A DNA stretch of 64,000 nt, from NCBI GenBank assembly GCA_965240325.2, contig OZ251224.1, positions 1,426,001 to 1,490,000 on the forward strand, written 5' to 3'. This DNA is from Rebecca billardiae RCC1528. Lineage: Eukaryota > Protista > Haptophyta. Positions within the stretch are counted from its first letter, which is position 1; each line of letters begins with the position of its first letter. Under the pieces are notes generated by a model. That model searched no databases. It was not told the origin of the DNA and saw only the letters and a program-made list of their open reading frames with translations. Below are positions 21,100-64,000 of this stretch, one piece after another. A program made the position numbers and the translations under genes.

Positions 21100-22339
21100 G
21101 CCTGACCTACCATAACCACTCAGTGAGTACTACGGGCACTACCACCGTAGGCTCGGTAGGCACTCCGATTCACTAGCACGGTCACACCGTCACTCTGAGT
21201 CTGACCGACGGCGACTGGTACTAAGACTATTACTAGGCGCTCTACCTGGAAGCTGGTAGACCTAAGAACTCTACGTCCGAGGATAAAGTACTATATTACA
21301 GTAGTGCAGTGCTCCTCGGATTGCAACTCACAATGGCTGAAAATCCGAGTCCGGCCAGTCGGATCTCGCGGCCGACGGATTCAGGACGTCTGATGACCCA
21401 CCTCGGTGCGGCCAGAAAACGATGAAGGTAAAGGCCAACAGCCAACGGGACGGTCTCGTGACTCGGTTTATCTGTTACGCGTTATTCGTCGGCCTCGTGG
21501 GGCCTCGACAGCCGGGCCTCCCGTGCGACGTGCCCGTGGCTCGTCGGCCGATCGGCGGAGGCGGTAATCATGTCTGTGGAGCCTAGCTAGCTTACTAGTC
21601 TTGAAACTGAGTCGAACGTCGGTACCAGTTGTCACTGATAGTGAGTAGTGACGGGCCGCCCGCCGGCGGGACGGCCCGGCCGGCGGCAAGCGGCGCACGG
21701 AGCATAGCTGGGCCCGCTCACGTGCGGGCAAGTATGTCCGGAGCAGGCCGAGGCGGATGCGTGCACAGGGGGGTCAGCCGCGGGAGCCGGGCCGCATGCG
21801 CGTTAAGTGAGGCATGTGCTCCACCTCGTCTTCACGCTGGCGGCCTGCTCGCGCTCGTGCGTCCAGCATCCCGCGCGCGGGCTAGCGGACTGCTCGCGGC
21901 CGCCCGATCCCGCGCAGAGGATCCAGAGTGGCTTCCGGAGTTCCGGAGCTAACCACGGGAGTACAGTCCTGTACTACTAGATAGTAGTACACGGCGGTGT
22001 ATGAATGTATGATACATAGTAGTAGCAGCATACTATCATACACGCCTTAAAAGCATACTACAAGACACTAGGTGTCTCGGTCAGTGGTTTGAGGTTGGGT
22101 GAGGGTGGTGGTTGGTTGGGGGCTGGCCAGGGTAGGGCTGGAGGCTTCGGCCGCCAGCCTGATCACCCGGAGCCCGTTATAAAGGGGAATTTAAAAATCA
22201 GGACGTGTGATTCATCGGTAATTCCGTCCTACCCGCTCCAAATATTCATCACGGATGAAGCATTCCCTTCGGATTCCCTTCCTGGGGTGGAGGTCGGATC
22301 CCCGCTCCCCGACTCCTCGTCACGAACGCCCCCCCTCCC

Positions 22340-25300
22340 ATGCTCCGTGCCCTGCGCCGCCGCCGCGAGGCGCGGGAGGTCCGCGAGCTCATTCTGGTGA
22401 CCGATCCGGGCCCTGATCCGGACGACGTGAAGGTATGCGCGCACGCTCTCGCCCCGCGCGCGTGGCCTGGATCGATGGCGCGCTCACCCACCAGCGAATT
22501 TTGTTGTCCGCAATCCGCCGTCCGCCGTCGCAGGCGATCCTGATTGTGGGCACGCTGCACAGGCGCGGCGACACCCGCCTTCGGCTTGTGGTTGCGAACG
22601 GCGGGCACCAGGCGCGGCAGCGCGCTCGGCTCGCGCGATGCGTGCTCGACGCGATCGGCGTGCGCGCCGTGCCCGTCGCGATCGGGAGCGAGGGCAAACC
22701 ATACGAGCCGGTGGCGCACGAGTACGCGCTCGATGGGTACGAGGCGGTGGACGAGTCGCGGCTCGAGGCCGACGGGCATGGCGCGATGGTGCGCGCGCTC
22801 GAGAGCGCGCGGCCCAAGTCCGTCACCGTCGTATGCATCTCCAGCCTGCGCGACCTCGCCGACGTGCTCAGCGCGCGGCCCGAGCTCGCGCTCGAGAAGC
22901 TCGAGAGAGTCGCGGTGCAGGCGGGCGTCGAGTTCGACCCGAGGGTGGGCAAGTGGGTGCCGGACACGTCGGTGAACAACGGGTTCGACCCCGAGGCGGC
23001 GGCGGCCGTGTACGACTTCTGCTTCGGCCGCGGGCTGCCGCTGACCGTTGTCTCGCGTCACGCGGTGCCGCTGCTGCCGATGCAGCTCGCGCGCTCGTTC
23101 GCCGAGCGCACGGCGTCGCCGCTGATGGCGTACCTCGCGAACGCGCAGTTCCTCGGGCTGGAGGGGCTGTGGCGCAAGCTGTGCGAGGGCAAGCTGCCCG
23201 CGCGCTGCTCCAAGCAGTGGTACTTTGAGACCTTCTGCGGCGTGGGCGCCAAGACGTTTGCAGCCAAGCGCTATGCCGAGCTCGATGCCCACACCGCCAT
23301 CGTCCGGTACCTGAACGGGTACGTGAAGCCGTACGACGTGCTCGCGCTGATGGCGGTGCTGCCGGGGCGGCCGGGGCACGCGTTCGCGCGGTGCCAGCGC
23401 GCGGACGCCAAGCTGCCGCCCTCCGCCCCGCCGGCCGCGCACGCGCTGCACCTTTCGCCCGAGCACGCCATCGACGTCGCGCACGTGATCGGCCTGCTGC
23501 GGCACGTGTACCGTGCGTGCGCGCGGCCCGCGCGCGCGCGCGCTCGGGCGCCTCCGCGTGCCGAGAGCCACCGCGCGCGCGCCCCGCCCCGGCTGACTGC
23601 CTGACTGCCGCCCTCCTTTGCGCGCGCGCGCCGGCCCACGTCACCAGACGACATCGTGCTGTCGACCTCGGCCTCAAGCGCCGCGGGCGTGAACCCGCAG
23701 CTCGCGAGCGAGCGGCAGCTCGACCGCGCCGAGCTGCGCGTGTCCAAGGGCGCGGCGTTCACGAGCGCGCTCACGCGCGGCTCGCGCTCGCGCACGCGCG
23801 GCAGCGGCCCGGCGCACCCGCCGCTGCGCGACGCGGGCGGCGACAACCGGCTGCCGAGCGGCGCGATCATCGAGCTGCTCGACGGGAGCGTGCACGCGGC
23901 GCGCGCGCAGCTCCAGCACGTCACGCGCGTCACGGCGGGCTTCTGCGCGCTCGGCTGCATGGTCGGCGTGCCCGTGTACCTCTGGGCGGCCCGCCAGCCG
24001 CCGCCGCCGCCGGACGATCTGCAGCGCGCCGCCGCGCTGCACGCGATCGGGCTGAGCGGCCTCGGGCTCACCGTGGTCTCGTTCTGCCTGGGGCGGCTCG
24101 CGCTGCAGCCGATCGCGTCGCACATGCGCGCCACCGCCGCCTTCGCCGCGGGCGGCGTGGCGGCCGTGCTGCTGTACATGGCGAGCGCCGTGCAGCTCGG
24201 GCTCGCGCAGCTCGAGCGCTCGCCCGCGGCCTTTTTCTTCTGCGCCGCCGGCCAGCCCGGCGCCATGTACACGGTGAGCGCCGGGCTGATCTTCGCGCTG
24301 GTCGGTGTCGCGCTCGCGCTCACGCTCTACCTGGCGCATGTGTTCATGCGCACGGCGGGGCGGCCGCCGCTGCTCGCGCAGCCCGCGCGGCTGCGGGCGC
24401 TGCGCACGTTCGCCCTGGTCGCGATGAGCGCGGGCGTGCTGCCGCTCGCAGCGCTGATCGGCGCGCGCTGCGTGCTGGAGCGCGCGAGCGGCGTGGCGCA
24501 GGCGGCCATGGTGGTGCCGTACACGCTCACGATCATCCCCGTCGTCATCTGCCTGTGCTACGCGCTGCTGCTGCCGGCCACCGCCGCGCGCGCCGAGGCG
24601 CTGTTCGCGCGGTGCGCGCGCGGCCGCGCGGCCGGGCTCGCCTGCACACTCGCCCCTCTTGTGGGGTACGGCGCAGCCGACCGGCTCGAGCCCGCGCTGC
24701 TGGTGCCCGAGGCGCTGCGCTCGGTGGCGGTGGCGCGGCTGGACGGGCCGACGCTGCGCGCGCTCGTGCTCCCCACCGCCGCCTCGTCGGACGGCAGGCC
24801 GAGTGGCGGCAGCGACGACGACAGCAGCTCGGCGCGCGGCCTCAGCCCAGGCTGGCCTCAGCGGCGCGGCCGCAGGCGCCACCGCCGCGCGCCGGGCTCC
24901 GCCGCGTCGCGCATCCTGCCCACGCCCGACGCGCGGCGCTCCACGGTCGTGATCGACCTGAGCGACGAGCGCGTGCGCGCGCCCGAGCGCATCGACGCGT
25001 TTGTCGTGCACGCGCGCGCCGACTCGTCCGCTGCGCGCGCGGAGGCGCTCGGCGCGTGGGCGCACGCGTACCGCGCGGCGCACGGCGGCGCGTCGCCGCG
25101 CGTCTGGCTCGACGCGCTGTGCGCGGACCCGTTCCTGGACCGGCAGCAACAGCTCGCGCACGAGGTGGTGGCGATGTGCCGCGCGCGCACGCTGCTCTGC
25201 CTGGTCTCGCCCGCGTTCGTCGACAGCCTGGGCTGCGTCGGCAGGCTGCTCGCGTGGCGCGCGTCGGGTGGTGCCACGGCTGACATTGCGGTGGTGTGCG

Positions 25301-25602
25301 TGGGCGACACGGCGGAGAAGCGCCGCGCCGCCATCGCCGCGGTGGATGCGTTCCACGTGCTGTACGCCTCCGCGGCACCGCGCGGCGCAGGCGGCGACGC
25401 CGGGGAGGACGCCGAGGACGCCGCCCTGGAGGCGCGCGCGCTCGTGCACGCGGTCCGGCTGACGGGCGTCGCGCGCGCCAACGCCGAGGTGCGCGCTCTG
25501 CTGCCCGCCGTGCAGCGCGCCGCGGAGCGTGCGGACACGGCGGCGGCGGCTGCTGCTGCTGATGACGACGTCAACGACGAGGCTACGACTGATGCTGTGT
25601 GA
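22340..25602 (+). CDS. Nucleoside hydrolase-like domain + multi-pass TM region + TIR-like domain fusion (~1008 aa); exons 22340-22432, 22534-23512, 23648-25602
   Basis: LILVTDPGPDPDDVK|AIL motif, plus SVNNGFDPEAA and PYDVLA. About six hydrophobic helices. TIR-like IDAFVVHARAD...RVWLDALC...LLCLVSPAFVDSLGCV. Introns 22433-22533 and 23513-23647 give 3027 nt in one frame. Confidence 0.8.
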
Positions 25603-25805
25603 CTCTTTGGAGGCGACGATGGACGTTGGTTGTCTGCTGACAGTAGAGCAAGGGCAGTAGTAGGAGAGGCCACCCGAGCGGATCGGAAAGTTGAATGATG
25701 ACGACGAACGAAGTTGGGACCCAACCCGAGCACAGCCGGCCGTGCGCCGCCCGGACGTGCTGAGCGCTCGAGCTCCCTCGTGCGGCCGCCAGTCGGGCTG
25801 CGAGA

Positions 25806-27170
25806 ATGCCGGTCGTCGACGTGCAGGGTGCGCCGTCGTCGTCCGCCGTGTGGGTGGATGCGTCGACGCTCCACGCCCTCCACGACGCCATGGACGCCGC
25901 TCGCCGACCCCGCGACGCCGCGCAGGGCGACGATGCGCTCGAGCGGTTGCGAGAGCTCTCTGTCGGTGAGATCGCGCTGGCCGAGCCGGAGCTTGAGCTC
26001 GAGCGGCCGCTGGGCGAGGGCGCGTTCTCCACCGTATCGCTCTGCATGCTGCGCGTTGGGCAGGCCGACCCTCGCTTCGAGGCCCTCACGCGCGCGTTCC
26101 CGACCGGCATGGTGGCGGTGAAGCGCATGAAGCCGATGGAGATGGCCGCAGGCGCGGCTGGCCCGGACAAGAGCCAGCGCGGCGCGGAGGTGGCCCTTCG
26201 CATGGAGGCAACCGTGCTCAAGTCGCTCAACCACCCCAACCTCGTCGGCTGCATCGGCTGCTTCGGCACGCCCACAGCGGCTGCGCCCTTCCTCGCCCTC
26301 GAGTTCCTCCCAGGGGGCTCGCTGCGCGACGCGGTGGCGCGGAGGCGGTACGAGGGCGTGCAGGCGCTCGCGTGGACGCTCGACGTCGCGCGGGCCATGA
26401 GCCACCTCCACCAGGCCGCCGAGCTCGCCACGCCCCCCCCGCGCGCCGGCGCTGCCGCCTCGGGCTCTGGCCCGGCCGCCGGCCCGGCCGCGTCCGTGCA
26501 CGTGATGCACCGAGATCTCAAGCTGGAGAACGTGCTGCTCAGCGCGGACGGCACGGCGAAGGTGTGCGACCTCGGCCTCGCGCGGGTGGTGGTGCCGCGC
26601 GGCTCGGCGCCCACTCGCGACGACGCCGACCCGGCGCCGGCGGCGGACCCGGCGGACGTGCAGATCGCGCTGGCGGACGCGGCGCCGGCAGCTGCCGAGC
26701 AGCGCGGCCGCGGCCCGCCGGGCGGCGGCGGCGGCGGCGGCGCGGACGGCGACGTGGTGTACACGGCACCGACGGGCTCGGAGCGGTACATGGCGCCGGA
26801 GAACTGGCGCGGGCACGGGCGGTACTCGCGCAAGGTGGACGTCTTCGCCTTCGGCATCCTCGCCTTCGAGCTGCTCTCGCAGGGCCGCGCGTACGAGGGC
26901 CTCTACCTGAGCTCCGAGCAGATCGTGCGCACGGTCGCCGAGCGCGGGCTGCGGCCGGCGCTGCCGTCGCGCTGGCCGGTGCGCGTCGCGACGCTGATCA
27001 CGCGCTGCTGGGACGAGGACCCCGAGCTCAGGCCCGAGTTCGCCGAGGTGGTGCACGAGCTCGAGGCGCTGCGTGACGAGTGCCCGCGCGCAGAGCTCAA
27101 CGAGCTGTTCGGCACGGGGGCGCGCCGCTCGTCCGGCCTCGGCGGGCTGTGCACGTGCGTCGTCGCCTGA
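25806..27170 (+). CDS. Protein kinase (TKL-like) with C-terminal CaaX
   Basis: LGEGAFSTV, VAVKRM, HRDLKLEN, DLG, GSERYMAPE, DVFAFG, CWDEDPELRPEF; ends LCTCVVA. Confidence 0.93.
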   Translation: MPVVDVQGAPSSSAVWVDASTLHALHDAMDAARRPRDAAQGDDALERLRELSVGEIALAEPELELERPLGEGAFSTVSLCMLRVGQADPRFEALTRAFPTGMVAVKRMKPMEMAAGAAGPDKSQRGAEVALRMEATVLKSLNHPNLVGCIGCFGTPTAAAPFLALEFLPGGSLRDAVARRRYEGVQALAWTLDVARAMSHLHQAAELATPPPRAGAAASGSGPAAGPAASVHVMHRDLKLENVLLSADGTAKVCDLGLARVVVPRGSAPTRDDADPAPAADPADVQIALADAAPAAAEQRGRGPPGGGGGGGADGDVVYTAPTGSERYMAPENWRGHGRYSRKVDVFAFGILAFELLSQGRAYEGLYLSSEQIVRTVAERGLRPALPSRWPVRVATLITRCWDEDPELRPEFAEVVHELEALRDECPRAELNELFGTGARRSSGLGGLCTCVVA

Positions 27171-30425: not shown

Positions 30426-33400
30426 ATGGGGTGCGCCCAGTCCAAGCCGGCCGCGAGCGGCGGGGCTGGGGCCCCAGTCGTGTCGGCAGATCGACGCGAT
30501 GGGGCGCGCACGCGGACTCGTTCGCGAACAGACGTCACCTCGCTGTCTCCCGACGACATTCAGCTGAGTGAGGCTGCGGCGCCAGCCCCTGCGACGTCGG
30601 GCGCTGCTGCCCGTTCGGATTCGACTGGAGCGGCACCGTCGGCCACGACCGGCGAGAAGCCCAAGGCGCACGCGGTGCCGGTGGCGCCGAGGAAGGAGAC
30701 GCAAAGTGCTGTGTCAGCGAAGCAGCCTACGCCATCCGAGCCGCCCGACGCTCGTAGACGGCCGAGTGAAACGGTCCCGGCGCCCGCTGCTGGTGCGGCC
30801 GGTGGGCCGCCCGTGCACTCAAGGCGGCCCAAGCCCCCCAGATCGCACGGGGCACCGGCCGCGGCGCGTGCGCGCTCTATCGCCTCCGACACGTCTCCGA
30901 TGCCGGCCGCGCCGGCCACTGCCGCTCCCGCGGCGGAGGCACCCGCTGCACGCGACGTGCCCAGTGCGGCGCCGCATCCTTCCGCGGCGCCAACAGTGCC
31001 CTTGCTGGCGGCGAGCGGGCATCCTCCTGCCGCCGAGCCGCCGAGGCCAGCCTCGCGCGCCGCGCCAAGAGCGATCGGCACGGGCCCCGCAGCTCCGACG
31101 GCACCACCAGCCGCCGCCGCCCAGCAGCCCGTTGCGCCAGCGGTGCCTCCAGGAGCCACCCTTGAAGCTGAGCCAGCCGGCGGCGTCTCGCCGCGACGGG
31201 CGGCCGCGCCGCCGTTGGCGCCTCCCAGCAAGCCCGCCGCTCCGCCGGCGCCTCCTCCTGCCGCCGAGCTCGCGGCGCCGCCCGCTCGTGCCTCGCCGAG
31301 AGCGAGCGCTGCGGCCGAGGCCGCCTCGCCGTGGCCCCCAGCGCCGGCGCCGGCCGCGCCGATGCGCATCCAGACGCCCTCGCACGAGCCCGCGCGCGCC
31401 GCCGCGGCAGCAGCAGCGGCCGAGCTCGAGACACCGCCCGCGACGGTGCCCAGCACGCCGGTCGGCAGCGCGCGCGGCGCGCCGCCCAGGCGCGGCGAGG
31501 TGGTGCTCGCGCGTCCGTTCGGCGAGTGGCGCGCGCAGGCGCGCGTGCCGCCCACCCTGGCCGAGGCCCTCGCGCGCGCCAAGGCGCCGTTCACGGACCG
31601 CGAGTTTGGCGGCGAGCGCGCGCTCTACTGCCTCGACGCGTCGCGCGCGCCGCGCTCCTACCTGAAGGGCGGCACGCGCGCGGTGGCGTGGGTGCGCGCG
31701 GCCGAGCTCGAGCCTGCCCTCGAGCTGTGGGGCGCCGCGGCGGCGGCGAGCACGGACGGCGTGAAGCAAGGCGCGCTCGGAGACTGCTACTTCCTCTCGG
31801 CGATCGCTCGGCTCGCCGCCGAGCCCGGCACCGTGGAGCGGCTGCTGATCGACGCGGGGCCGGGCGCGATCGGCGTGCGGCTGTGCGACTACGACGGCTG
31901 GCGCACCGTGCTGGTGGACGACAGGCTCGCGGTCGACGAGCGCACGCGCCTCCCGCTCTTCTGCGCGCCGCGCGCCGCCGAGCGCGCGCTGTGGGCGTGC
32001 GCGCTCGAGAAGGCGTTTGCCAAGCTGCACGGCGCCTACCAGAACATCGAGGGCGGCGCGCCCTCGGACGCGCTCGCGTACCTCACGGCGGGGCACACGG
32101 GGACGATCCGCATCCGCTCGGTGGAGCACGAGGCGGAGGGGCAGGCGCCGAGCGGCACGCGCTGGCAGGACGCGCTCTGGCGGCGTGTCGTCGAGATGCA
32201 CCAGACCGCGCGCGGCGGGCAGCGGTGCGTGCTGCTCGCAAGCGACGTCGCGGGCTCCAAGGCGCGCGACATCGGCGACGAGAGCGCTGAGCCCGAGGAG
32301 GGCGGCGGCGGGCTGCTCAGCTCGATGGTGCGCAAGCACGCGCTCGTGCCCAGGAAGAAGCGCTGGCCCGGCATCGGCGAGATGAACGTGATCGCCGAGA
32401 CGGCCGACGACCCGGGGCACTCGTTTGCGGTGCTGCGCGTGCACGAGGGGCTCGGCCACCGGCTGCTGCGGCTGTGCAACCCGTGGGGGCGGCGCGAGTG
32501 GAAGGGCGCCTTCTCGGACAAGTCGAGCGTGTGGACGGCGGAGCTCAAGGCGGAGTTCGGCTGGGACGAGGCCAAGGGCGGCCACCGCGACGAGACCGAC
32601 GGCATCTTCTGGATGCCGTGGGCCGACTTCCTCGAGCAGTTCGAGTCGGTGTCGTACGCGTACGTGCCGGCCGAGGCGGCGCCGTCGGTGCACGTGACGA
32701 GCGAGTGGCGCGCCGAGCTGACGGCGGGCGGCGTCGAGGCGCTCGCGGGGTACAACCCCCGCTTCGTGCTCAGCTTGAATCGTGCGCGCGCGCCTGCGCG
32801 CGCTGCGGGCGCGCGCGACGCCGCGGGCAGCCCTGCACGCGTCGCGCCGTCGCCGCTGACGCACCCTCCGCCCTCCGGGCTGCCCTCGCGGCGCGCCCCG
32901 CCGCTCCGGACCGTGCCCTCAGGCCGCGCGCAGGTCTTCCTCGCGCTCACGCAGCCAGGCGTGCGGCACTTCGGCGGCGGCGGGCACCTCGAGATGTACC
33001 TCCAGGTCTTCCGCGTGGACACGGCGCGCGCCGAGCAGCCGCCGCGGCTCGAAGACAAGCTCGACGGCGGCGAGATTGCGATCTCGCACCGGCGCGGCTC
33101 GCTCGCCCTCGAGCTGGACCCAGGGGGCGGCGCCAAGACGTTTGTCCTCGTCGCCTCGCTGTGGGAGGCGGGCTGGGAGGGCTCGTTCGGGCTGACCGTG
33201 GTGCTCGCCGACGCGATGGGCGCGCCGGACGCGCGCATCGCCGTGCGCGAGCTCGAGCCGAGCGCGCCGCCCGAGGCGCACGCGCGGCTGATGCGCCGGC
33301 CCCCCGTCTGGGAGTCGTGCGCCACATGCCGGCAGCCGTGCCCGATCGGCCGCGGGGACGACTTCGAGTGGTTCCGCGGCGTGCGCTGGCACAGCGGCGC

Positions 33401-34271
33401 GTGCTGCAAGTGCGCAAAGTGCGGCGTCCTGCTCACCGCCGCGCGCCAGGCGCGCAAGCACACCGGCGGCCCGTCGGCGCGGCAGGGCGTGCACGCCGTG
33501 CACGCGCAAGCTGGGCGCGTGCAGGGCTTTTGCGAGGAGTGCCACCGCGCCGACTTTGCGTACCGCTGCCTGCAGTGCGGCGAGCCGATCGACGGCGCGG
33601 AGCCGTGGGTCGTGCTGGCGAGCGCCGACGAGGAGGCGGCCGGCGGGCATGGCGCCGCCGCCGGCGCGGACGCGACGCCGCGCCCGTTCCGCAAGGTGCA
33701 CGCGTCCTGCCGCGATGCGTACCGGCAGGCGAGTGCGGACGTGTGCGTCGCCTGCCAGCAGCCCATCCTCGAGAGCTCGTACTACCAGAAGGAGGAGGGG
33801 CGCGTGCACCACTCGGGGGACTGCCTCGCGCGGTACCATGAGGCGCACGCCGACAGATGCGCCGGCTGCGGCCTCGCCATCCTGGGCAAGTATGTCGAGC
33901 TCGAGCTGGAGGACGGCGGCGGGACGATCCAGCTGCATGCCGATGCCGAGTGCAAGCAGCGGTACCTCGCGCAGCACGGCCCGCGGTGCATCGTCTGCGG
34001 CGAGCCCGTGCTTGGCAGCACGTTCTACTCGGTGGCGGCCGAGGACGGAGGCGGGGCCGCGGCGAAGGTGCACTCCGAGGCCGAGCGCGCAGACTGCATG
34101 CGGCGCCACAAGGAGAGCCGGGCGCCCAAGTGCGCCGTGTGCAGCAAGCCGATCTTGGGCGCGTGCTATGAGATGGACGGCGCAGACGGCAGCACGGTGC
34201 GCGTGCACGCAGAGTCGGAAGTGCCCGACTGCATCGGCGAGTATGATCGCGCGCAGGCCGCGCGTGCCTGA
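30426..34271 (+). CDS. N-acylated calpain (CysPc + domain III) with C-terminal LIM and half-LIM zinc fingers; probable in-frame intron 32782-32922
   Basis: MGCAQSK acylation motif. Catalytic triad QGALGDCYFLSA, GHSFAV, LCNPWG; also LEKAFAKLHGAY, DGIFWM, YNPRF. Repeated CxxC..PI...H..C fingers at the C-terminus. Confidence 0.92.
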   Translation: MGCAQSKPAASGGAGAPVVSADRRDGARTRTRSRTDVTSLSPDDIQLSEAAAPAPATSGAAARSDSTGAAPSATTGEKPKAHAVPVAPRKETQSAVSAKQPTPSEPPDARRRPSETVPAPAAGAAGGPPVHSRRPKPPRSHGAPAAARARSIASDTSPMPAAPATAAPAAEAPAARDVPSAAPHPSAAPTVPLLAASGHPPAAEPPRPASRAAPRAIGTGPAAPTAPPAAAAQQPVAPAVPPGATLEAEPAGGVSPRRAAAPPLAPPSKPAAPPAPPPAAELAAPPARASPRASAAAEAASPWPPAPAPAAPMRIQTPSHEPARAAAAAAAAELETPPATVPSTPVGSARGAPPRRGEVVLARPFGEWRAQARVPPTLAEALARAKAPFTDREFGGERALYCLDASRAPRSYLKGGTRAVAWVRAAELEPALELWGAAAAASTDGVKQGALGDCYFLSAIARLAAEPGTVERLLIDAGPGAIGVRLCDYDGWRTVLVDDRLAVDERTRLPLFCAPRAAERALWACALEKAFAKLHGAYQNIEGGAPSDALAYLTAGHTGTIRIRSVEHEAEGQAPSGTRWQDALWRRVVEMHQTARGGQRCVLLASDVAGSKARDIGDESAEPEEGGGGLLSSMVRKHALVPRKKRWPGIGEMNVIAETADDPGHSFAVLRVHEGLGHRLLRLCNPWGRREWKGAFSDKSSVWTAELKAEFGWDEAKGGHRDETDGIFWMPWADFLEQFESVSYAYVPAEAAPSVHVTSEWRAELTAGGVEALAGYNPRFVLSLNRARAPARAAGARDAAGSPARVAPSPLTHPPPSGLPSRRAPPLRTVPSGRAQVFLALTQPGVRHFGGGGHLEMYLQVFRVDTARAEQPPRLEDKLDGGEIAISHRRGSLALELDPGGGAKTFVLVASLWEAGWEGSFGLTVVLADAMGAPDARIAVRELEPSAPPEAHARLMRRPPVWESCATCRQPCPIGRGDDFEWFRGVRWHSGACCKCAKCGVLLTAARQARKHTGGPSARQGVHAVHAQAGRVQGFCEECHRADFAYRCLQCGEPIDGAEPWVVLASADEEAAGGHGAAAGADATPRPFRKVHASCRDAYRQASADVCVACQQPILESSYYQKEEGRVHHSGDCLARYHEAHADRCAGCGLAILGKYVELELEDGGGTIQLHADAECKQRYLAQHGPRCIVCGEPVLGSTFYSVAAEDGGGAAAKVHSEAERADCMRRHKESRAPKCAVCSKPILGACYEMDGADGSTVRVHAESEVPDCIGEYDRAQAARA

Positions 34272-59492: not shown

Positions 59493-60149
59493 GCCGGGCG
59501 GCAGCGGCGGCCGCAGCATCGGCGCGCCCGCCGCCGCCGCCGCCGCCGTGCGCACGCGCGCCAGCCAGCTCTGCGTGAGCGCAGCCTCGTACGCCCGGCA
59601 GTTGGACACGTCGGACGCGCGCGCGGTCGCCGCGAGCGCCTGCGCTGCCTCCGCGCCCGCCAGCACCGAGCCCGGCGCGTCGGCGGCGGGGGCGCTCACG
59701 AGCAGCAGCCGCTGGGAGTTGATCGCTCGGCCAACGGCGGCGGCGACCGCTGGGCTCTCCCACCGGGCCAGGTACCACAGCCCCGCGACGGCGGGCGGGA
59801 GCCAGACGAGCTCGCGCACGCAGAGCGCGCCGCCGAGCGCGCCGAGCGCGCCGCCCGCCGCCTCGGCCGTCAGCGCGTCGAGGGCTCGCAGCACGGCCTC
59901 CGGCCGCGGCGCACTCGGAGCGTATAGCTCAAGCAGCAACGTGCGCGCCGCGGGCGTGTCGGCGGGCGCGGACACGAGCGGCGGGGCGAGCGCCTGCCTG
60001 TAGTCGGCGAAGCTCAGCCCGCCATCCGCTCCGAGTGGCAGGAGGCCGCGGCCCAGACTGTCGGCCAGCGGCAGCCTCGCCCACTCCGGCGTGCACAGCG
60101 CCCCGCCGCCGCCCTCGGCAAGCGCGGACGCGTCCGCGCGGAACACGCT

Positions 60150-60207
<58 letters not shown>

Positions 60208-63047
60208 AGCGCGGCGAGTGAGAGCGCGTGGGCGCTCTGCATCGGGCTCGGGCCCTCGGCGACAGAGCCGAGGGCAGGCTGCGGCGGCGGCGGCGGCGCG
60301 GCGGCCTGGCCCGCCGCCGCGCCGCCCTGCGCACTCGAAGGCTGCGCCGCGGGCTGCGCCGCGGGCGGCGGCTGCGGCGGCTTGTGAGCGCCCAGCGCCG
60401 CGCCGCCGCTGTTGCCCCAGGCGTTGGCGCCGCCGTGCGCCGGCGCCGGCGCCACCGGCTCTCGCGCGGGCATCGAGGCCGAGCGCAGGAGGGGCGCCGC
60501 GGGTGGCCCCTGCGCACCGGGTGCGCACGCGCCGCCGGGTGCGCCGCCGCGCGCGCCACCGAGGGCGCCGCACACAACCGCTGGGCCCCAGGCCCCGCCC
60601 GGCGGCGCGGCCGCGGATGCCAGCTCGGCCGAGATCGAATCTGCCGAGGGCGCGCGGCGCGCGCCCTGCGGCGGGCGCTGCTGCGCGGCGCGCGCGCCCT
60701 GCGGCTGCGCGTGCGCGGCGGCGGCTGCGCCGTTGCACGCATAGCCGCCGCCGCCGCCGCCGCCGCCCGCCGCAGCCCCGTTCGCGCCCGCGCCGCCGCC
60801 GGCCTGCGCGCGCGCCCTCGCGCCCGCGCCGCGCTCTGCGCCCGCCGCCGCGCCGCCGCCGCCGCCGCCCTTCGCCGAGCCGCCCTCGGCGCCCTTGGTC
60901 GGCGCGCGCCCGCCCGCCTGGCCGGCGAGCTCGCGCATCCAGCGCGAGTGCTCGGCCGCCTCCCGCCGCTCGCGTTCGCTCGCGCCGTCCGCGCCCGCGA
61001 GCACGTCAGCCGCCTGCGGCGGCGCGGAGGCGCGGCGCGCGGAGGCCGCGTGCGCGCCGCCGCCTCTCGCGCCGCGCGCGCCGCCGCCCGCGCCGTTCAC
61101 GCCGCCAGAGCCACTCGTCGCGGCGTGGTGCACCAGCGAGGACGCGGCAAGCTGCGCCTTGAGCCCCGGCGCCGCCAGCTTGAGCAAGTCGTCCATGCCG
61201 TCGGAGTCCGAGCACGAGGAGACGTCGTCGTCGTCCGACTCGGCGGACTGGCCGCCGCCGCGCCGCTCGTCCGTCGCGTTGGCGACGGCCGCCGCCGCGT
61301 CGGTGGCGGCGTCGGCGTCGGCGACATCGCCCGAGCTGCGGCCGGCGCGGCCGGCGGCGGCGGCCCCGCCGCCGCCGTTCCCTCCTCCGCCGCCGCCGCC
61401 GCTGCTGCTGCCACGCTGCTTGCTCAGCGTCGCCCCCGCCGCACCGGCGGGCCGGCGCGCGCTCGGCTCTGCGGCCGCGCCGCGCGATGCGGCCGCGGCG
61501 CGCCCCGCGCCGCGCGCCTCGGCGGCGGGCGCAGCCGCGCCCGCGGCGGCCGGGCCGTCTCGCTTCGCCTTGGCGCGCTTGCGTCGCGTGGTCGTGCTCG
61601 GCTTGCGCGGCGCGCCCGCCGGCTCGGCGCTCACCGTCGACACGACCGGCGCCGGCTCGGGCGCGACGGCCGGCGGCGACTCGGACTGGCGGCGCGGCGC
61701 CGCGCGCGCGGCCGCGGGCGCGGGCTGGCCGGCGCCGAGGGCGTCGACGGCGCTCGGCGCGGGCGCGGGCAGCGGCGCGGCGTGCGCGGCGGGCGCGCTG
61801 GGCGGCGGCGGCTGCGGCGCGGGCGCGGGCGCCGCGGCGGGCGCCACCGCGGCGCGCACGCGCCCGCTCAGCGCCACCCACTTCGCCTGCAGCTTGGCGA
61901 GCGCGGAGTCGTCGATGCCGCCGCGCGCCGCGCGCTGCTGCGCGAGCGAGCTCTCAAACGCGTCGAGCTGCGCGCCGAGCGTGGCGGCGGTGGGCGGGTG
62001 CGCGGCGTGTGCGGTGCGCAGCGCGGTGCGCGCCACGTCGCACGCGCTCGCGAGCCGCTGCACGCCGTGCGCCGTGCGCGCCTCCTGCGCGAGCGCGGCC
62101 GCCAGCACCACGTGCTTCCGCTGCTTGGAGATGGCGAGCGGGGACTTGCCCGTCGCGTCCTGCACGTCCGGCGAGGCGCGCGCGGCGAGCAGCGCGGCGA
62201 CGGAGCCCTCGCAGCCGACGAGGCACGCGGCGTGCAGCGCGGTGCGCCCTGTGCGACTCTCCTGCCAGTTCGGGTCGAGCCCCGTCGCGAGCAGCAGCCG
62301 CACCACGGAGGGCTGCCCGCCCGCCGCCGCCTTGAAGACGCGCTCGTGCACCGCCTCCGCGTCCGCTCGCGCGTCGTACGCGACGGAGTCGAGCTCGACG
62401 ACCACCTCGAGCGAGGGCGGGCGGGCGGAGTCGGCGCGCGCGCGCGCGCACGCGCGACCAAAGTCCGCGCCGAGCAGCGCCTCCGACTCCGCCGCCGCCG
62501 CCGCCGCCGCCGCCGCCTCGGCCGCAGGCGCGAGGCTCGTCGGCGGCGGCGGCGCGGCCGCGAGCTCGGCGCGCGCGGCCGCCGCGCCCGCGACTCCGCC
62601 CGCCGACTGCGCGGCCGCGGCCGCGGCCGCGCCGCCGTCCGCGCCGTCCGCCGCCGCGCCGCCGGGCACGGGTTCCGGCACCGCCGCCGCCGGCCGCGCG
62701 GGCGTGACGAGCGCGATCGGCCCCGCGCGCGCCGCGGCCGCGAGCTCGCGCACGCGCGCCGCGCCCGCCGCGCTCACCGCCGCGACCAGCGTGTCACCGT
62801 CCTGCACCCCGAGGTCGAGGGGGCAGTGTGAGGCGCGGATGCGCTCGCCGCGGCGGTACAGGTGGACGCGGCCGCCGCAGGAGGTGGGCGGGAGCCGCTT
62901 CGCGAGGGAGGAGCACAGCGTGCCGAAGCGCGTCGTCTGCAGCATCTTGAAGTGGAACTCGGCGGGCGCGGCCGCGCCCGGCGGCAGCGCGCCCGCCCCC
63001 GCGCCGGCCGCGGGCGCGCCCGCGGGCGCGCCCGCCGCCGCGCAGCT

Positions 63048-63078
<31 letters not shown>

Positions 63079-64000
63079 GGCGGCGAGGGCGCCGCCTCGG
63101 GCGGGTCGGCGGGGGCGGCGTCGGCCGCCGCCGCGCCCCGCGCCGCCGCCGGCTGCGCGGGCGCGTCGGCGGGCGGCTGCGCGAGCGCGGCCGCGGCCGC
63201 GGGCGCATCCGCCGACGGCGCGCCCGCCGCGCCCGCCGGCGGCGCGGGCGCATCGACAACTGTGACTCGCACTGAGAGCACGGCGGCGGTGCCCTTGACA
63301 AAGGCGAGGCCGAGGCGCGTGCGCGCGGCGCCGAGCGCGTCGAGGTCGCCCGGCCCGCATTCCGCCAGCCACGTCGTCACCGGGTCCGCCGCCTCCTCCG
63401 CCGCCGCGGCCAGCGCGCTCGCGGGCGCGTCCGCGCCCGGCGCGCTGCCGTCTGCGCTGACGTCCGCGCCGCCGCCCGCGCCGCCCGCGCCGCCCGCGCC
63501 GCCCGCGGCGCGGCACGCCGGGCAGGTCCAGTCCCACAGCGCGCCGAGCGCGACGGCCTCGGCGCCCGGCTGCGCCGCGAGCGCGTCCGCGCGCGCGAGC
63601 GAGCTCGCGGGCACCAGCCTCGCCAGCTCCGCCGCGGGCATGCACGCCGCGTGGAAGTGGACGTGGCAGCGGCGCGCGGCGCAGCGGATCATCATGTGGG
63701 GGTGGCCGTCCGAGCCGGGCGAGGCGCCGGCGGAGGCGCACGCCGCCGCGGCGCCGCCGAGCGCGCGCGGCGGCACGGCGTCGCGCGCGGACGCGGGCGG
63801 CGCCGTCGAGTCGCCGCACAGCGCGCACAGCACCAGCTGCTCCCGGCGCAGCACCTGCCGCCAGCCCCAAGACTCGCCCGGGTTGAACAGGTGGTCGGTC
63901 GAGAGTCGCACGAGCTGCTGCGCCGCGCCGCCGTGCGCGCGCACGCTCGCGCCCACGCGCAGGCGCACGCCCGCGGCGGCGGTGCCGGCGAGCATCTTGA
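58474..64000 (-). CDS. Large multidomain protein, 5'-truncated by the window: MATH C-terminus with inserted PHD, SUMO-like domain, ankyrin repeats, PAM2-like and UIM-like motifs; introns 59064-58942 and 58661-58552
   Basis: HLFNPGESWGW; CALC...MIRC...CHVHFHAAC...WTCPAC; FHFKMLQTTRF...GERI...LGVQDGDTL; TGRTALHAAC...DATGKSPL; SLDPRAREWTP; spliced last exon ends DVDAAMRLALDA. Confidence 0.82.
60150..60206. repeat. (CCG)n trinucleotide repeat encoding poly-Gly
   Basis: About 19 CCG units within the minus-strand CDS. Confidence 0.9.

What the first reader, a model, noticed from the sequence alone, without database searches (positions are those of the whole stretch)
22340..25602. Nucleoside hydrolase - multi-TM - TIR-like fusion protein
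Seen: two GT-AG introns join an IU-nucleoside-hydrolase-like domain (TDPGPDPDD aspartate motif), about six TM helices and a C-terminal TIR-like fold into one 1008-aa frame. The position equivalent to the TIR catalytic WCxxE reads GCVGR. Known: TIR domains are NADases or scaffolds, and they pair with nucleotide-processing effectors in bacterial and plant immunity. Inference: a membrane-anchored nucleotide signalling or defence module in which the TIR is probably catalytically dead and the hydrolase is the enzyme or sensor. I do not recognise this architecture as a described family.
Basis: partly seen in the sequence, partly recalled or inferred. Interest (0 to 1): 0.75.

Follow-up and report, generated by a model that had tools for sequence, protein, structure and literature searches.

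The report
XopQ-like hydrolase, membrane, dead-TIR fusion
This algal gene encodes one membrane protein joining an enzyme like bacterial XopQ, recently reported to destroy a TIR-made immune signal, to a TIR-like domain that has lost its key catalytic residue; it is one of over 50 such genes in this genome, and I found no paper describing the family.

Summary
Three exons (22340-22432, 22534-23512, 23648-25602) give a 1008-aa frame. No RNA run was listed, but six intronless paralogs read '...LLRxVY-H-DVVL...' across the intron-2 junction, exactly the predicted spliced product.

- **N-terminal domain:** a XopQ/HopQ1-type ribohydrolase. It has the non-canonical TDPGPDPDD motif and the Asp equivalent to XopQ D399.
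- **Middle:** six TM helices with N-in/C-in topology.
- **C-terminal domain:** the model has pLDDT 93. Its best solved matches are TIR domains (VIA Z 8.5-9.4; Foldseek top hits nearly all TIR). It fails Pfam TIR thresholds.
- **Catalytic Glu:** the position reads Arg. This copy belongs to a 12-member clade that lost the Glu once. About half of the 63 sampled paralogs keep WCxxE, as do 146 of 188 public relatives.

By my pairing of hits, the genome holds at least 50 such genes. Relatives occur in Diacronema lutheri, Pavlovales sp. CCMP2436 and Pavlova gyrans transcripts.

Best reading (inferred): a membrane-anchored breaker of a TIR-made nucleotide signal, docked by a non-catalytic TIR-like domain.

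The scan has noted this family before on other DNA of this genome. I found no paper describing it.

The parts
22340..22432 (+). Exon 1: start codon and first strand of the hydrolase domain, with the Asp motif TDPGPDPDD at 22400-22426
   Evidence: The motif aligns with XopQ 'TDPNKDPDD' through intronless paralog L013.
22433..22533 (+). Intron 1 (GT..AG, 101 nt)
   Evidence: Paralog L013 has no intron here and reads DPDDVK|ALLIAGTLH, matching the window's DPDDVK|AILIVGTLH.
22534..23512 (+). Exon 2: bulk of the XopQ/HopQ1-like IU-nucleoside-hydrolase-fold domain. NN at 22975-22980; YD at 23332-23337, where the D is equivalent to XopQ D399
   Evidence: PF01156 2e-12. PDB XopQ 4kl0/4p5f 1.2e-16. 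NCBIfam XopQ 1.7e-24 but 86 bits against a 500-bit cut-off. Motifs checked.
23513..23647 (+). Intron 2 (GT..AG, 135 nt); contains the in-frame stop at 23602-23604
   Evidence: Six intronless paralogs read VY-H-DVVL across the junction.
23648..25602 (+). Exon 3: linker, six TM helices, juxtamembrane element, disordered linker, TIR-like domain, stop codon
23857..24618 (+). Six-helix transmembrane bundle (exon-3 residues 70-323)
   Evidence: Hydropathy peaks. AF2 helices 70-115, 124-151, 156-188, 204-234, 240-279, 288-323 at pLDDT about 90. Only generic helical-bundle fold matches, Z up to 8.5. It is the fastest-evolving structured part.
24619..24777 (+). Conserved juxtamembrane element (exon-3 residues 324-376; consensus LAPLxGxG...EPxxLVPEALR)
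   Evidence: Invariant A335 and G341 in alignment A2. Modelled at pLDDT 78-94. Function unknown.
24967..25599 (+). TIR-like domain with a C-terminal helical extension (exon-3 residues 440-650)
   Evidence: AF2 pLDDT 93.3. Foldseek top 50 nearly all TIR, best E 2.9e-3, prob 0.99. In VIA wide the top nine are all TIR, Z 8.5-9.4. No Pfam hit for this copy.
25231..25245 (+). GCVGR, in place of the family's WCxxE; the Arg sits on the TIR catalytic Glu column
   Evidence: Column counts E 32, R 9, Q 6, A 5, L 3, G 3 of 63. Register supported.

Best explanation
**Shown.** The locus is a real three-exon gene for a 1008-aa membrane protein.
- The cytosolic N-terminal domain is a XopQ/HopQ1-type calcium-dependent ribohydrolase with all checked catalytic motifs intact.
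- Six TM helices anchor the protein, followed by a small conserved juxtamembrane element.
- A cytosolic C-terminal TIR-like domain follows. Its catalytic Glu is Arg and the neighbouring Trp is lost.
- The gene belongs to a family of at least 50 paralogs in this genome. Relatives occur in pavlovophyte haptophytes.
- Its 12-member clade lost the Glu once.

**Inferred.** The hydrolase domain cleaves a ribose-linked, NAD-derived nucleotide made by TIR enzymes. Bacterial XopQ is reported to do this to 2'cADPR. The dead TIR-like domain would serve as a docking or assembly module. It would bring the hydrolase to active TIR assemblies, either Glu-bearing paralogs or the genome's separate Pfam-grade TIR_2 proteins, at a membrane. 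There it would end or dampen the signal. In Glu-bearing paralogs, one chain could both make and break the signal.
For: **Gene model:**

**One-gene architecture:**
- All 20 fully fetched paralog loci show hydrolase, then membrane region, then TIR-like domain on one strand.
- 55 public proteins carry both domains. They include complete MMETSP ORFs and a Pavlova gyrans transcript.

**XopQ type:**
- Best PDB hits are XopQ, at 1.2e-16 for exon 2 and 9.7e-23 for the intact domain of L013.
- The TDPxxDPDD motif is shared with XopQ.
- The Asp residues that correspond by my alignment count to D120 and D399 are both kept. Mutating those two inactivates XopQ (bioRxiv 10.64898/2026.06.15.732069).
- TDPGPDPDD was found in 14 of 21 sampled copies, and the upstream search found no match in the other seven. 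NN is kept in 20, the D of NNxxD in 21 and YD in 18, whatever the Glu state.

**TIR-like domain:**

**Single loss of the Glu:** the 12 Arg/Gly copies form one clade, SH-aLRT 95. Glu is the majority state outside it.

**The Glu-less domain is still constrained:** dN/dS is 0.3-0.8, against 0.5-1.3 for the TM bundle.

**Topology:**

**Possible signal makers:** ten loci in this genome pass the Pfam TIR_2 cut-off.
Against: - There is no biochemistry and no expression data for this gene (one search listed no run).
- The alga's hydrolase reaches only 86 bits against the 500-bit XopQ equivalog cut-off. XopQ tells 2'cADPR from 3'cADPR, so the substrate cannot be read from homology.
- The TIR assignment rests on a predicted model with middling scores. 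Z is 8.5-9.4, where unmatched models typically reach 7-8. Foldseek E is above 1e-3 and the hhalign probability is 19.7%.
- The docking role of the dead TIR-like domain is pure inference. The homodimer prediction gave no answer.
- The immune role rests on family size and analogy only.
- dN/dS values are inflated by extreme GC3 bias, so only their ranking is informative.
Confidence: 0.45

Rival explanations
1. Sensor-effector. The hydrolase domain mainly binds a nucleotide signal. Binding rearranges or oligomerises the six-helix bundle into a pore or channel, giving ion flux or cell death, as membrane effectors of bacterial TIR and cyclic-nucleotide defence systems do.
For: The six-TM bundle lies directly between two cytosolic nucleotide-related domains. 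Family size of at least 50 copies suits a conflict system. In the solved XopQ structure the product ADPR stays bound in the pocket (PDB 4p5f).
Against: The full catalytic motif set is kept, which argues for turnover rather than mere binding. The TM bundle is the least conserved structured part, at 31-36% identity to paralogs against 70-73% for the hydrolase. It matches no channel fold above generic helical-bundle level.
Confidence: 0.2
2. HET-like self/non-self or cell-death module. The C-terminal domain acts like the fungal HET domain (a TIR relative), triggering death on encounter with an incompatible partner. The hydrolase would be an accessory.
For: Three of 63 paralogs give weak HET hits, best E 0.06. 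By my recollection, unchecked here, the VWLDxxCxDP motif resembles the HET WIDxLCINQ motif. The family is large, variable and lineage-specific.
Against: The HET model finds nothing in this genome at E <= 0.01, though that control rang nowhere. TIR_2 hits are stronger, 9e-4. All solved-structure matches are TIR. No HET structure or profile was available to compare.
Confidence: 0.1
3. Housekeeping purine/pyrimidine salvage. It would be a membrane-tethered nucleoside hydrolase, with a C-terminal domain that is only a structural scaffold.
For: The PF01156 hit is above the cut-off. Weak hits to RihA and RihC.
Against: The domain carries the XopQ/HopQ1-type motif rather than the canonical DxDxxxDD. 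Its best matches are XopQ by many orders of magnitude. XopQ and HopQ1 show no activity on standard nucleosides. A salvage enzyme would not be expected in 50 or more fast-diverging copies fused to a TIR-like domain.
Confidence: 0.1
4. Decaying copy. After loss of the TIR Glu this clade is drifting towards pseudogenes and has no function of its own.
For: Glu and Trp are lost. The TM region has dN/dS near 1 against paralogs. Some family members carry in-frame stops.
Against: The 1008-aa frame is intact with canonical splice sites. Hydrolase motifs are intact. Hydrolase dN/dS is 0.32-0.47 and TIR-like 0.3-0.8. The Glu-less clade expanded to 12 copies after the loss, and nine of them keep Arg.
Confidence: 0.05

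Closest known systems
XopQ / HopQ1 (type III effectors of Xanthomonas and Pseudomonas syringae; PDB 4kl0, 4p5f, 7jlu)
   Same: Same fold and the same non-canonical motif (TDPNKDPDD against TDPGPDPDD). NN..D and the C-terminal YD Asp are kept. These are the best solved relatives, at 1e-16 to 1e-22. XopQ is reported to hydrolyse the TIR product 2'cADPR to ADPR (bioRxiv 10.64898/2026.06.15.732069).
   Different: Only 86 bits against the 500-bit equivalog cut-off. It is eukaryotic and intron-bearing. It has no secretion leader. It is fused to six TM helices and a TIR-like domain. Its activity is untested.
Algal HopQ1-like proteins (HLPs) of Piechocki et al. 2018 (PMC6019455)
   Same: That paper reports an algal clade of HopQ1-like hydrolases with the modified calcium motif (Aureococcus, Thalassiosira, Emiliania). 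This domain fits that description.
   Different: The paper trimmed the sequences to the hydrolase domain. It never uses the word 'transmembrane', and my search of its text did not ask about TIR. Pavlovophytes are not among the algae named in the passages I read.
Catalytic TIR domains (plant RUN1/RPP1/RPS4, SARM1, bacterial ThsB/SpbK/AbTir)
   Same: Same predicted fold. The family consensus D.FVSHS / VWLD / LLLL.GP / RLWCV.EL mirrors the TIR strand A, strand B, strand C and helix C with SxWCxxEL. Glu is kept in most relatives.
   Different: This copy has Arg at the Glu position and Gly at the Trp. It fails Pfam TIR and TIR_2. It carries an extra C-terminal helical extension.
Non-catalytic adaptor or regulatory TIRs (MyD88, MAL/TIRAP, SIGIRR, RRS1)
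   Same: A TIR fold used for assembly rather than catalysis. The best sequence-profile match in the PDB is SIGIRR. MyD88 and MAL are among the top fold matches.
   Different: No evidence here of assembly (one search gave no answer). The domain partners are different.
Multi-TM TIR proteins of Gephyrocapsa huxleyi induced during virus infection (PMC12489294)
   Same: Haptophyte proteins with several N-terminal TM helices followed by a cytosolic TIR domain. The ESM Atlas holds haptophyte clusters matching the six-TM plus TIR-like module (TM-score 0.58/0.80).
   Different: Those proteins were reported to have the Glu and no further domains. No hydrolase fusion is described. Homology to this family was not tested.
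Fungal HET domain (PF06985)
   Same: A TIR-related death domain in large, variable gene families. Weak hits in 3 of 63 paralogs.

Membership tests
IU_nuc_hydro superfamily (PF01156) | Sequence match above Pfam's gathering score | tested here: met
   Exon 2 scores 47.8 bits against a 34.2-bit cut-off, E 2e-12.
XopQ/HopQ1-like clade of nucleoside hydrolases | Non-canonical calcium/Asp motif (TDPxxDPDD instead of DxDxxxDD) | tested here: met
   The window reads TDPGPDPDD. It aligns to XopQ TDPNKDPDD through paralog L013.
XopQ/HopQ1-like clade of nucleoside hydrolases | Closer to XopQ than to canonical hydrolases | tested here: met
   XopQ 1.2e-16 against 2.8e-4 for the best canonical hydrolase. 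NCBIfam XopQ 1.7e-24 against RihC 4.9e-5.
XopQ/HopQ1-like clade of nucleoside hydrolases | Residues whose mutation inactivates XopQ (D120, D399) are present | tested here: met
   Both Asp residues are conserved in the alignments. The mutants are described. The numbering correspondence is my own count, assuming a 13-residue tag in 7jlu_B.
XopQ equivalog (NCBIfam NF041355) | Score above the 500-bit curated cut-off | tested here: not met
   86.3 bits. It is a relative, not an ortholog.
XopQ function | Hydrolysis of 2'cADPR to ADPR | not testable with these tools
   Needs an enzyme assay.
TIR domain (PF01582 / PF13676) | Sequence match to a Pfam TIR model | tested here: not met
   No hit for this copy even at E 10. 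Three of 63 paralogs hit TIR_2 weakly, best 9e-4. hhalign against this genome's TIR_2 domains gives E 0.0012, probability 19.7%.
TIR domain (fold level) | Flavodoxin-like TIR fold | tested here: met
   Model pLDDT 93.3. The Foldseek list is almost all TIR. The top nine VIA wide rows are TIR, Z 8.5-9.4, 95-144 residues aligned. The scores are middling, so this is fold-level support only.
Catalytic TIR (NADase) | Glu in helix C (WCxxE) | tested here: not met
   The window has GCVGR. Glu is present in 32 of 63 paralogs and 146 of 188 public relatives.
HET domain (PF06985) | Sequence match to the HET model | tested here: inconclusive
   Three of 63 paralogs at E 0.06 or worse. The genome search found none, but the control rang nowhere.
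Known anti-phage defence proteins (PADLOC) | Match to any PADLOC model | tested here: not met
   No hit for any of the three pieces.

The most novel reading that the evidence does not exclude
XopQ-type hydrolases are native partners of TIR signalling in eukaryotic algae. This family would then be a self-contained, membrane-bound unit that makes a cADPR-like signal (Glu-bearing copies) and breaks it. The Glu-less clade that includes this gene would have specialised as pure signal terminators or decoys. That would imply 2'cADPR-like immune signalling in haptophytes. It would also point to host immune regulators as the kind of protein from which the bacterial effector XopQ arose, or the reverse.
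Probability: 0.3. Interest if true: 0.85.

Novelty: new variant of a known kind. Interest (0 to 1): 0.7.

Why it matters
A June 2026 preprint reports that XopQ is a specific hydrolase of the TIR product 2'cADPR. Here the same type of enzyme is fused to a TIR-like domain in one polypeptide, in dozens of copies, in a eukaryote far from land plants. Such a fusion is independent, 'Rosetta stone' evidence that this enzyme type and TIR domains work on the same molecules.

It gives a direct way to ask three things:
- whether haptophyte algae use cADPR-type immune signals;
- how such signals are switched off by the host itself;
- where the bacterial effector came from.

The repeated loss of the TIR Glu beside a constant hydrolase also offers a natural series for separating the maker, breaker and scaffold roles.

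Tried and rejected
**Searches and tests that gave nothing**
- RNA evidence: no RNA run was listed for 22200-25700.
- The word-indexed protein search found nothing with exon 3 or with the TIR-like region of L013. Exhaustive HMMER found 3170 relatives, so those two blanks reflect the limits of that index.
- NCBIfam and PADLOC: nothing for exon 3 or the TIR-like piece.
- ESM Atlas by features: scores up to 0.76, uninformative.
- Viral contigs: the TIR-like alignment was too variable to search. The hydrolase alignment found no viral relative.
- Complex prediction on two copies of the TIR-like domain: no answer. This is neither for nor against binding.
- TM bundle fold: only generic helical bundles, plus weak cytochrome b561 and TRP S1-S4 rows at Z 6.8-7.5, below the level that means anything for helical proteins. 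I rejected a channel or b561 assignment.

The exons were searched by reference one by one. Intronless paralogs (L013 and others) served as full-length proxies.

**Readings considered and rejected**
- Two separate genes: rejected.
- An extracellular hydrolase domain: rejected because there is no signal peptide and the number of TM helices is even.
Full report
**1. Is it there?**

Yes. The + strand from 22340 to 25602 gives three exons separated by two GT..AG introns.
- Exon 1 is 22340-22432 and ends '...LVTDPGPDPDDVK'.
- Exon 2 is 22534-23512.
- Exon 3 is 23648-25602, with stop TGA.
- The split codon C|AC encodes His.

No RNA run was listed for this stretch, so I could not test the junction with reads. 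Comparative evidence does the job instead.
- Six paralogs in the same genome carry the region as one uninterrupted frame. They read '...LLRxVY H DVVL...', exactly the window's exon 2 end 'LLRHVY', the split His, and exon 3 'DIVLSTS'.
- Paralog L013 also lacks intron 1 ('DPDDVKALLIAGTLHKRGD' against the window's 'DPDDVK|AILIVGTLHRRGD').

The exons were searched by reference, and intronless paralogs served as full-length proxies.

**2. The N-terminal domain**

- Exon 2 passes Pfam IU_nuc_hydro at 47.8 bits against a 34.2-bit cut-off.
- Its best solved relatives are XopQ, 4kl0/4p5f, at 1.2e-16. The next class, canonical hydrolases, starts at 2.8e-4.
- NCBIfam ranks XopQ first at 1.7e-24, but with 86 bits against a 500-bit equivalog cut-off. 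It is a relative, not an ortholog.
- With the intact domain of L013, the alignment to XopQ (7jlu_B, 9.7e-23) pairs 'lvlITDPGPDPDDV' with 'LLFTDPNKDPDDV'. This is the non-canonical motif that defines HopQ1-like proteins (PMC6019455).
- 'PDTSVNNGFD' pairs with XopQ 'PDTRAYNNATD', and 'KPYDVLALMAVLPG' with 'NLYDPLTLLAALPG'.
- By my count, assuming a 13-residue tag in 7jlu_B, the Asp residues correspond to XopQ D120 and D399. Mutating those two abolishes activity.
[quoted passage not shown] It reports no activity on ordinary nucleosides.

**3. The middle**

- Hydropathy gives six segments. The loop charges fit N-in/C-in.
- The N-terminus has no signal peptide, and the hydrolase fold starts at about residue 17.
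- AF2 on exon 3, with 20 aligned relatives, gives mean pLDDT 79.7. It shows six long helices at pLDDT about 90, a small conserved juxtamembrane element (residues 331-373), a disordered linker (377-432) and then the C-terminal domain.
- The bundle matches only generic helical bundles, Z up to 8.5.
- The ESM Atlas holds haptophyte clusters with the same six-TM plus C-terminal module (TM-score 0.58/0.80, 282 members).

**4. The C-terminal domain**

No Pfam, NCBIfam, PADLOC or PDB sequence hit was found for this copy. Evidence for a TIR-like fold comes from several directions.
- *Model:* with 63 paralogous domains as the alignment, AF2 gives pLDDT 93.3.
- *Foldseek:* the list is almost entirely TIR domains, best E 2.9e-3, probability 0.99.
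- *VIA search (does not lean on Foldseek):* TIR domains fill the top nine rows, Z 8.5-9.4, with 95-144 residues aligned. These scores are middling, so they support the fold only.
- *Sequence, same direction:* TIR_2 is hit weakly in 3 of 63 paralogs, best 9e-4. SIGIRR TIR is the best PDB profile match, on 'rLLlLaGp..rlWCvve'.
- *hhalign:* against nine Pfam-grade TIR_2 domains of this same genome it gives E 0.0012 and probability 19.7%.

The hhalign register puts the window's Arg on the invariant TIR_2 Glu.

The family consensus 'D.FVSHS ... VWLD ... LLLL.GP....RLWCV.EL' mirrors the TIR core. The window reads 'GCVGR' at 25231-25245.

**5. The family**

*In this genome.* The TIR-like domain has at least 98 matches and the hydrolase at least 139 exon-level matches. 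Pairing rows by contig, strand and distance gives more than 50 loci with hydrolase upstream of the TIR-like domain. This is a manual pairing, so the number is approximate. All 20 loci that I fetched whole have that order.

*In public data.*
- A profile of the TIR-like domain finds 3170 cluster representatives at E <= 1e-3.
- 55 of the 194 proteins I retrieved carry both domains.
- Named sources are Diacronema lutheri, Pavlovales sp. CCMP2436, Pavlova gyrans and MMETSP transcripts with complete ORFs.
- Those transcripts are mRNA-level evidence of the fusion in relatives.
- None is more than about 63% identical to L013's hydrolase domain, so this genome itself appears not to be in those collections.

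**6. The Glu**

- Among the 63 sampled paralogs the column reads E 32, R 9, Q 6, A 5, L 3, G 3, others 5.
- Among public relatives, E is found in 146 of 188 and R only once.
- On a tree of the domain, the 12 Arg/Gly copies form one clade (SH-aLRT 95) whose sister has Gln. At least eight changes between Glu and non-Glu are needed overall.
- These 12 are the same copies that share a recognisable TM region with the window gene.
- The hydrolase motifs are largely constant. TDPGPDPDD was found in 14 of 21 sampled copies, and the upstream search found no match in the other seven. NN is kept in 20, the D of NNxxD in 21 and YD in 18, whatever the Glu state.

**7. Constraint**

Nei-Gojobori estimates give:

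| Part | dN/dS |
|---|---|
| Hydrolase | 0.32-0.47 |
| TIR-like domain | 0.3-0.8 |
| TM bundle | 0.5-1.3 |
| Linkers | about 1 or more |

. Extreme GC3 bias depresses dS, so only the ranking is safe. The hydrolase is the most constrained part. The Glu-less TIR-like domain is still constrained. The bundle is the most variable structured part. That favours an anchor or a diversifying surface over a conserved channel.

**8. How it most likely works**

*Shown:* a membrane protein with an intact XopQ-type active site and a Glu-less TIR-like domain, both on the cytosolic side, in a large and varied family.

*Inferred:* the hydrolase cleaves a TIR-made ribosyl nucleotide, and the dead TIR-like domain docks it to active TIR assemblies. 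This copy would then act as a signal terminator, and Glu-bearing paralogs could make and break the signal. I put this at about 0.45.

*Rivals:*
- a ligand-gated membrane effector (0.2);
- a HET-like death module (0.1);
- salvage (0.1);
- a decaying copy (0.05).

**9. Known or new**

- HopQ1-like hydrolases in algae were reported in 2018, but only as trimmed domains.
- Multi-TM TIR proteins of Gephyrocapsa huxleyi were reported in 2025 without further domains.
- Searches for the fusion found no paper.
- UniProt auto-labels some Diacronema members 'TIR domain-containing protein' or as an inosine/uridine-preferring nucleoside hydrolase; the second name is truncated in the output.
- This scan has already noted the same family on other DNA of this genome. 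19 notes hold the search words, and three of the eight shown carry follow-ups that reached the same reading. I did not rely on them.

**10. Surroundings**

A protein kinase gene starts 204 nt downstream (25806-27170), and a calpain-type protease ORF lies at 30426-34271. I saw nothing that links either to this gene.

Noticed in passing
window 25806-27170 (+): Intact 454-aa protein kinase ORF (PK_Tyr_Ser-Thr 1.9e-37) starting 204 nt after the stop of the fusion gene, on the same strand.
   Followed up: partly
window 30426-34271 (+): 1281-aa open frame with a calpain-family cysteine protease domain (Peptidase_C2, 1.5e-46).
   Followed up: no
G000, e.g. C7:2969159-2970163, C12:2177212-2178141, C7:1392288-1393043, C16:1320666-1321523, C27:158151-158966: About 20 further loci have the XopQ-like hydrolase domain with no nearby match to the TIR-like domain, often in open frames of about 2000 aa. 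The hydrolase seems to be combined with other partners too. One public relative (P0186) joins it to TPR repeats.
   Followed up: no
G000 C13:293189-293515, C5:1949398-1950210, C34:1015527-1015853, C13:1545244-1546164, C10:3069773-3070066 and others: Ten loci pass the Pfam TIR_2 cut-off and all nine aligned ones keep the Glu. None belongs to the hydrolase fusion family. They are candidate signal makers.
   Followed up: partly
G000 C17:1153380, C1:1215273, C7:2748049 (L009-L011); C3:2337465 and C17:1277951 (L014, L015): Family members about 95% identical in the TIR-like domain lie on different contigs, so recent dispersed duplication is going on.
   Followed up: partly
G000 C12:125052-133437: Three short open frames (284-295 aa) with weak matches to the TIR-like domain lie within 8 kb. 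The basal all-Glu clade of the tree consists of other such weak matches, several in shorter open frames and none with a nearby hydrolase match.
   Followed up: no
window 60001-64000: G+C reaches 0.83-0.84, well above the window's usual 0.6-0.75.
   Followed up: no
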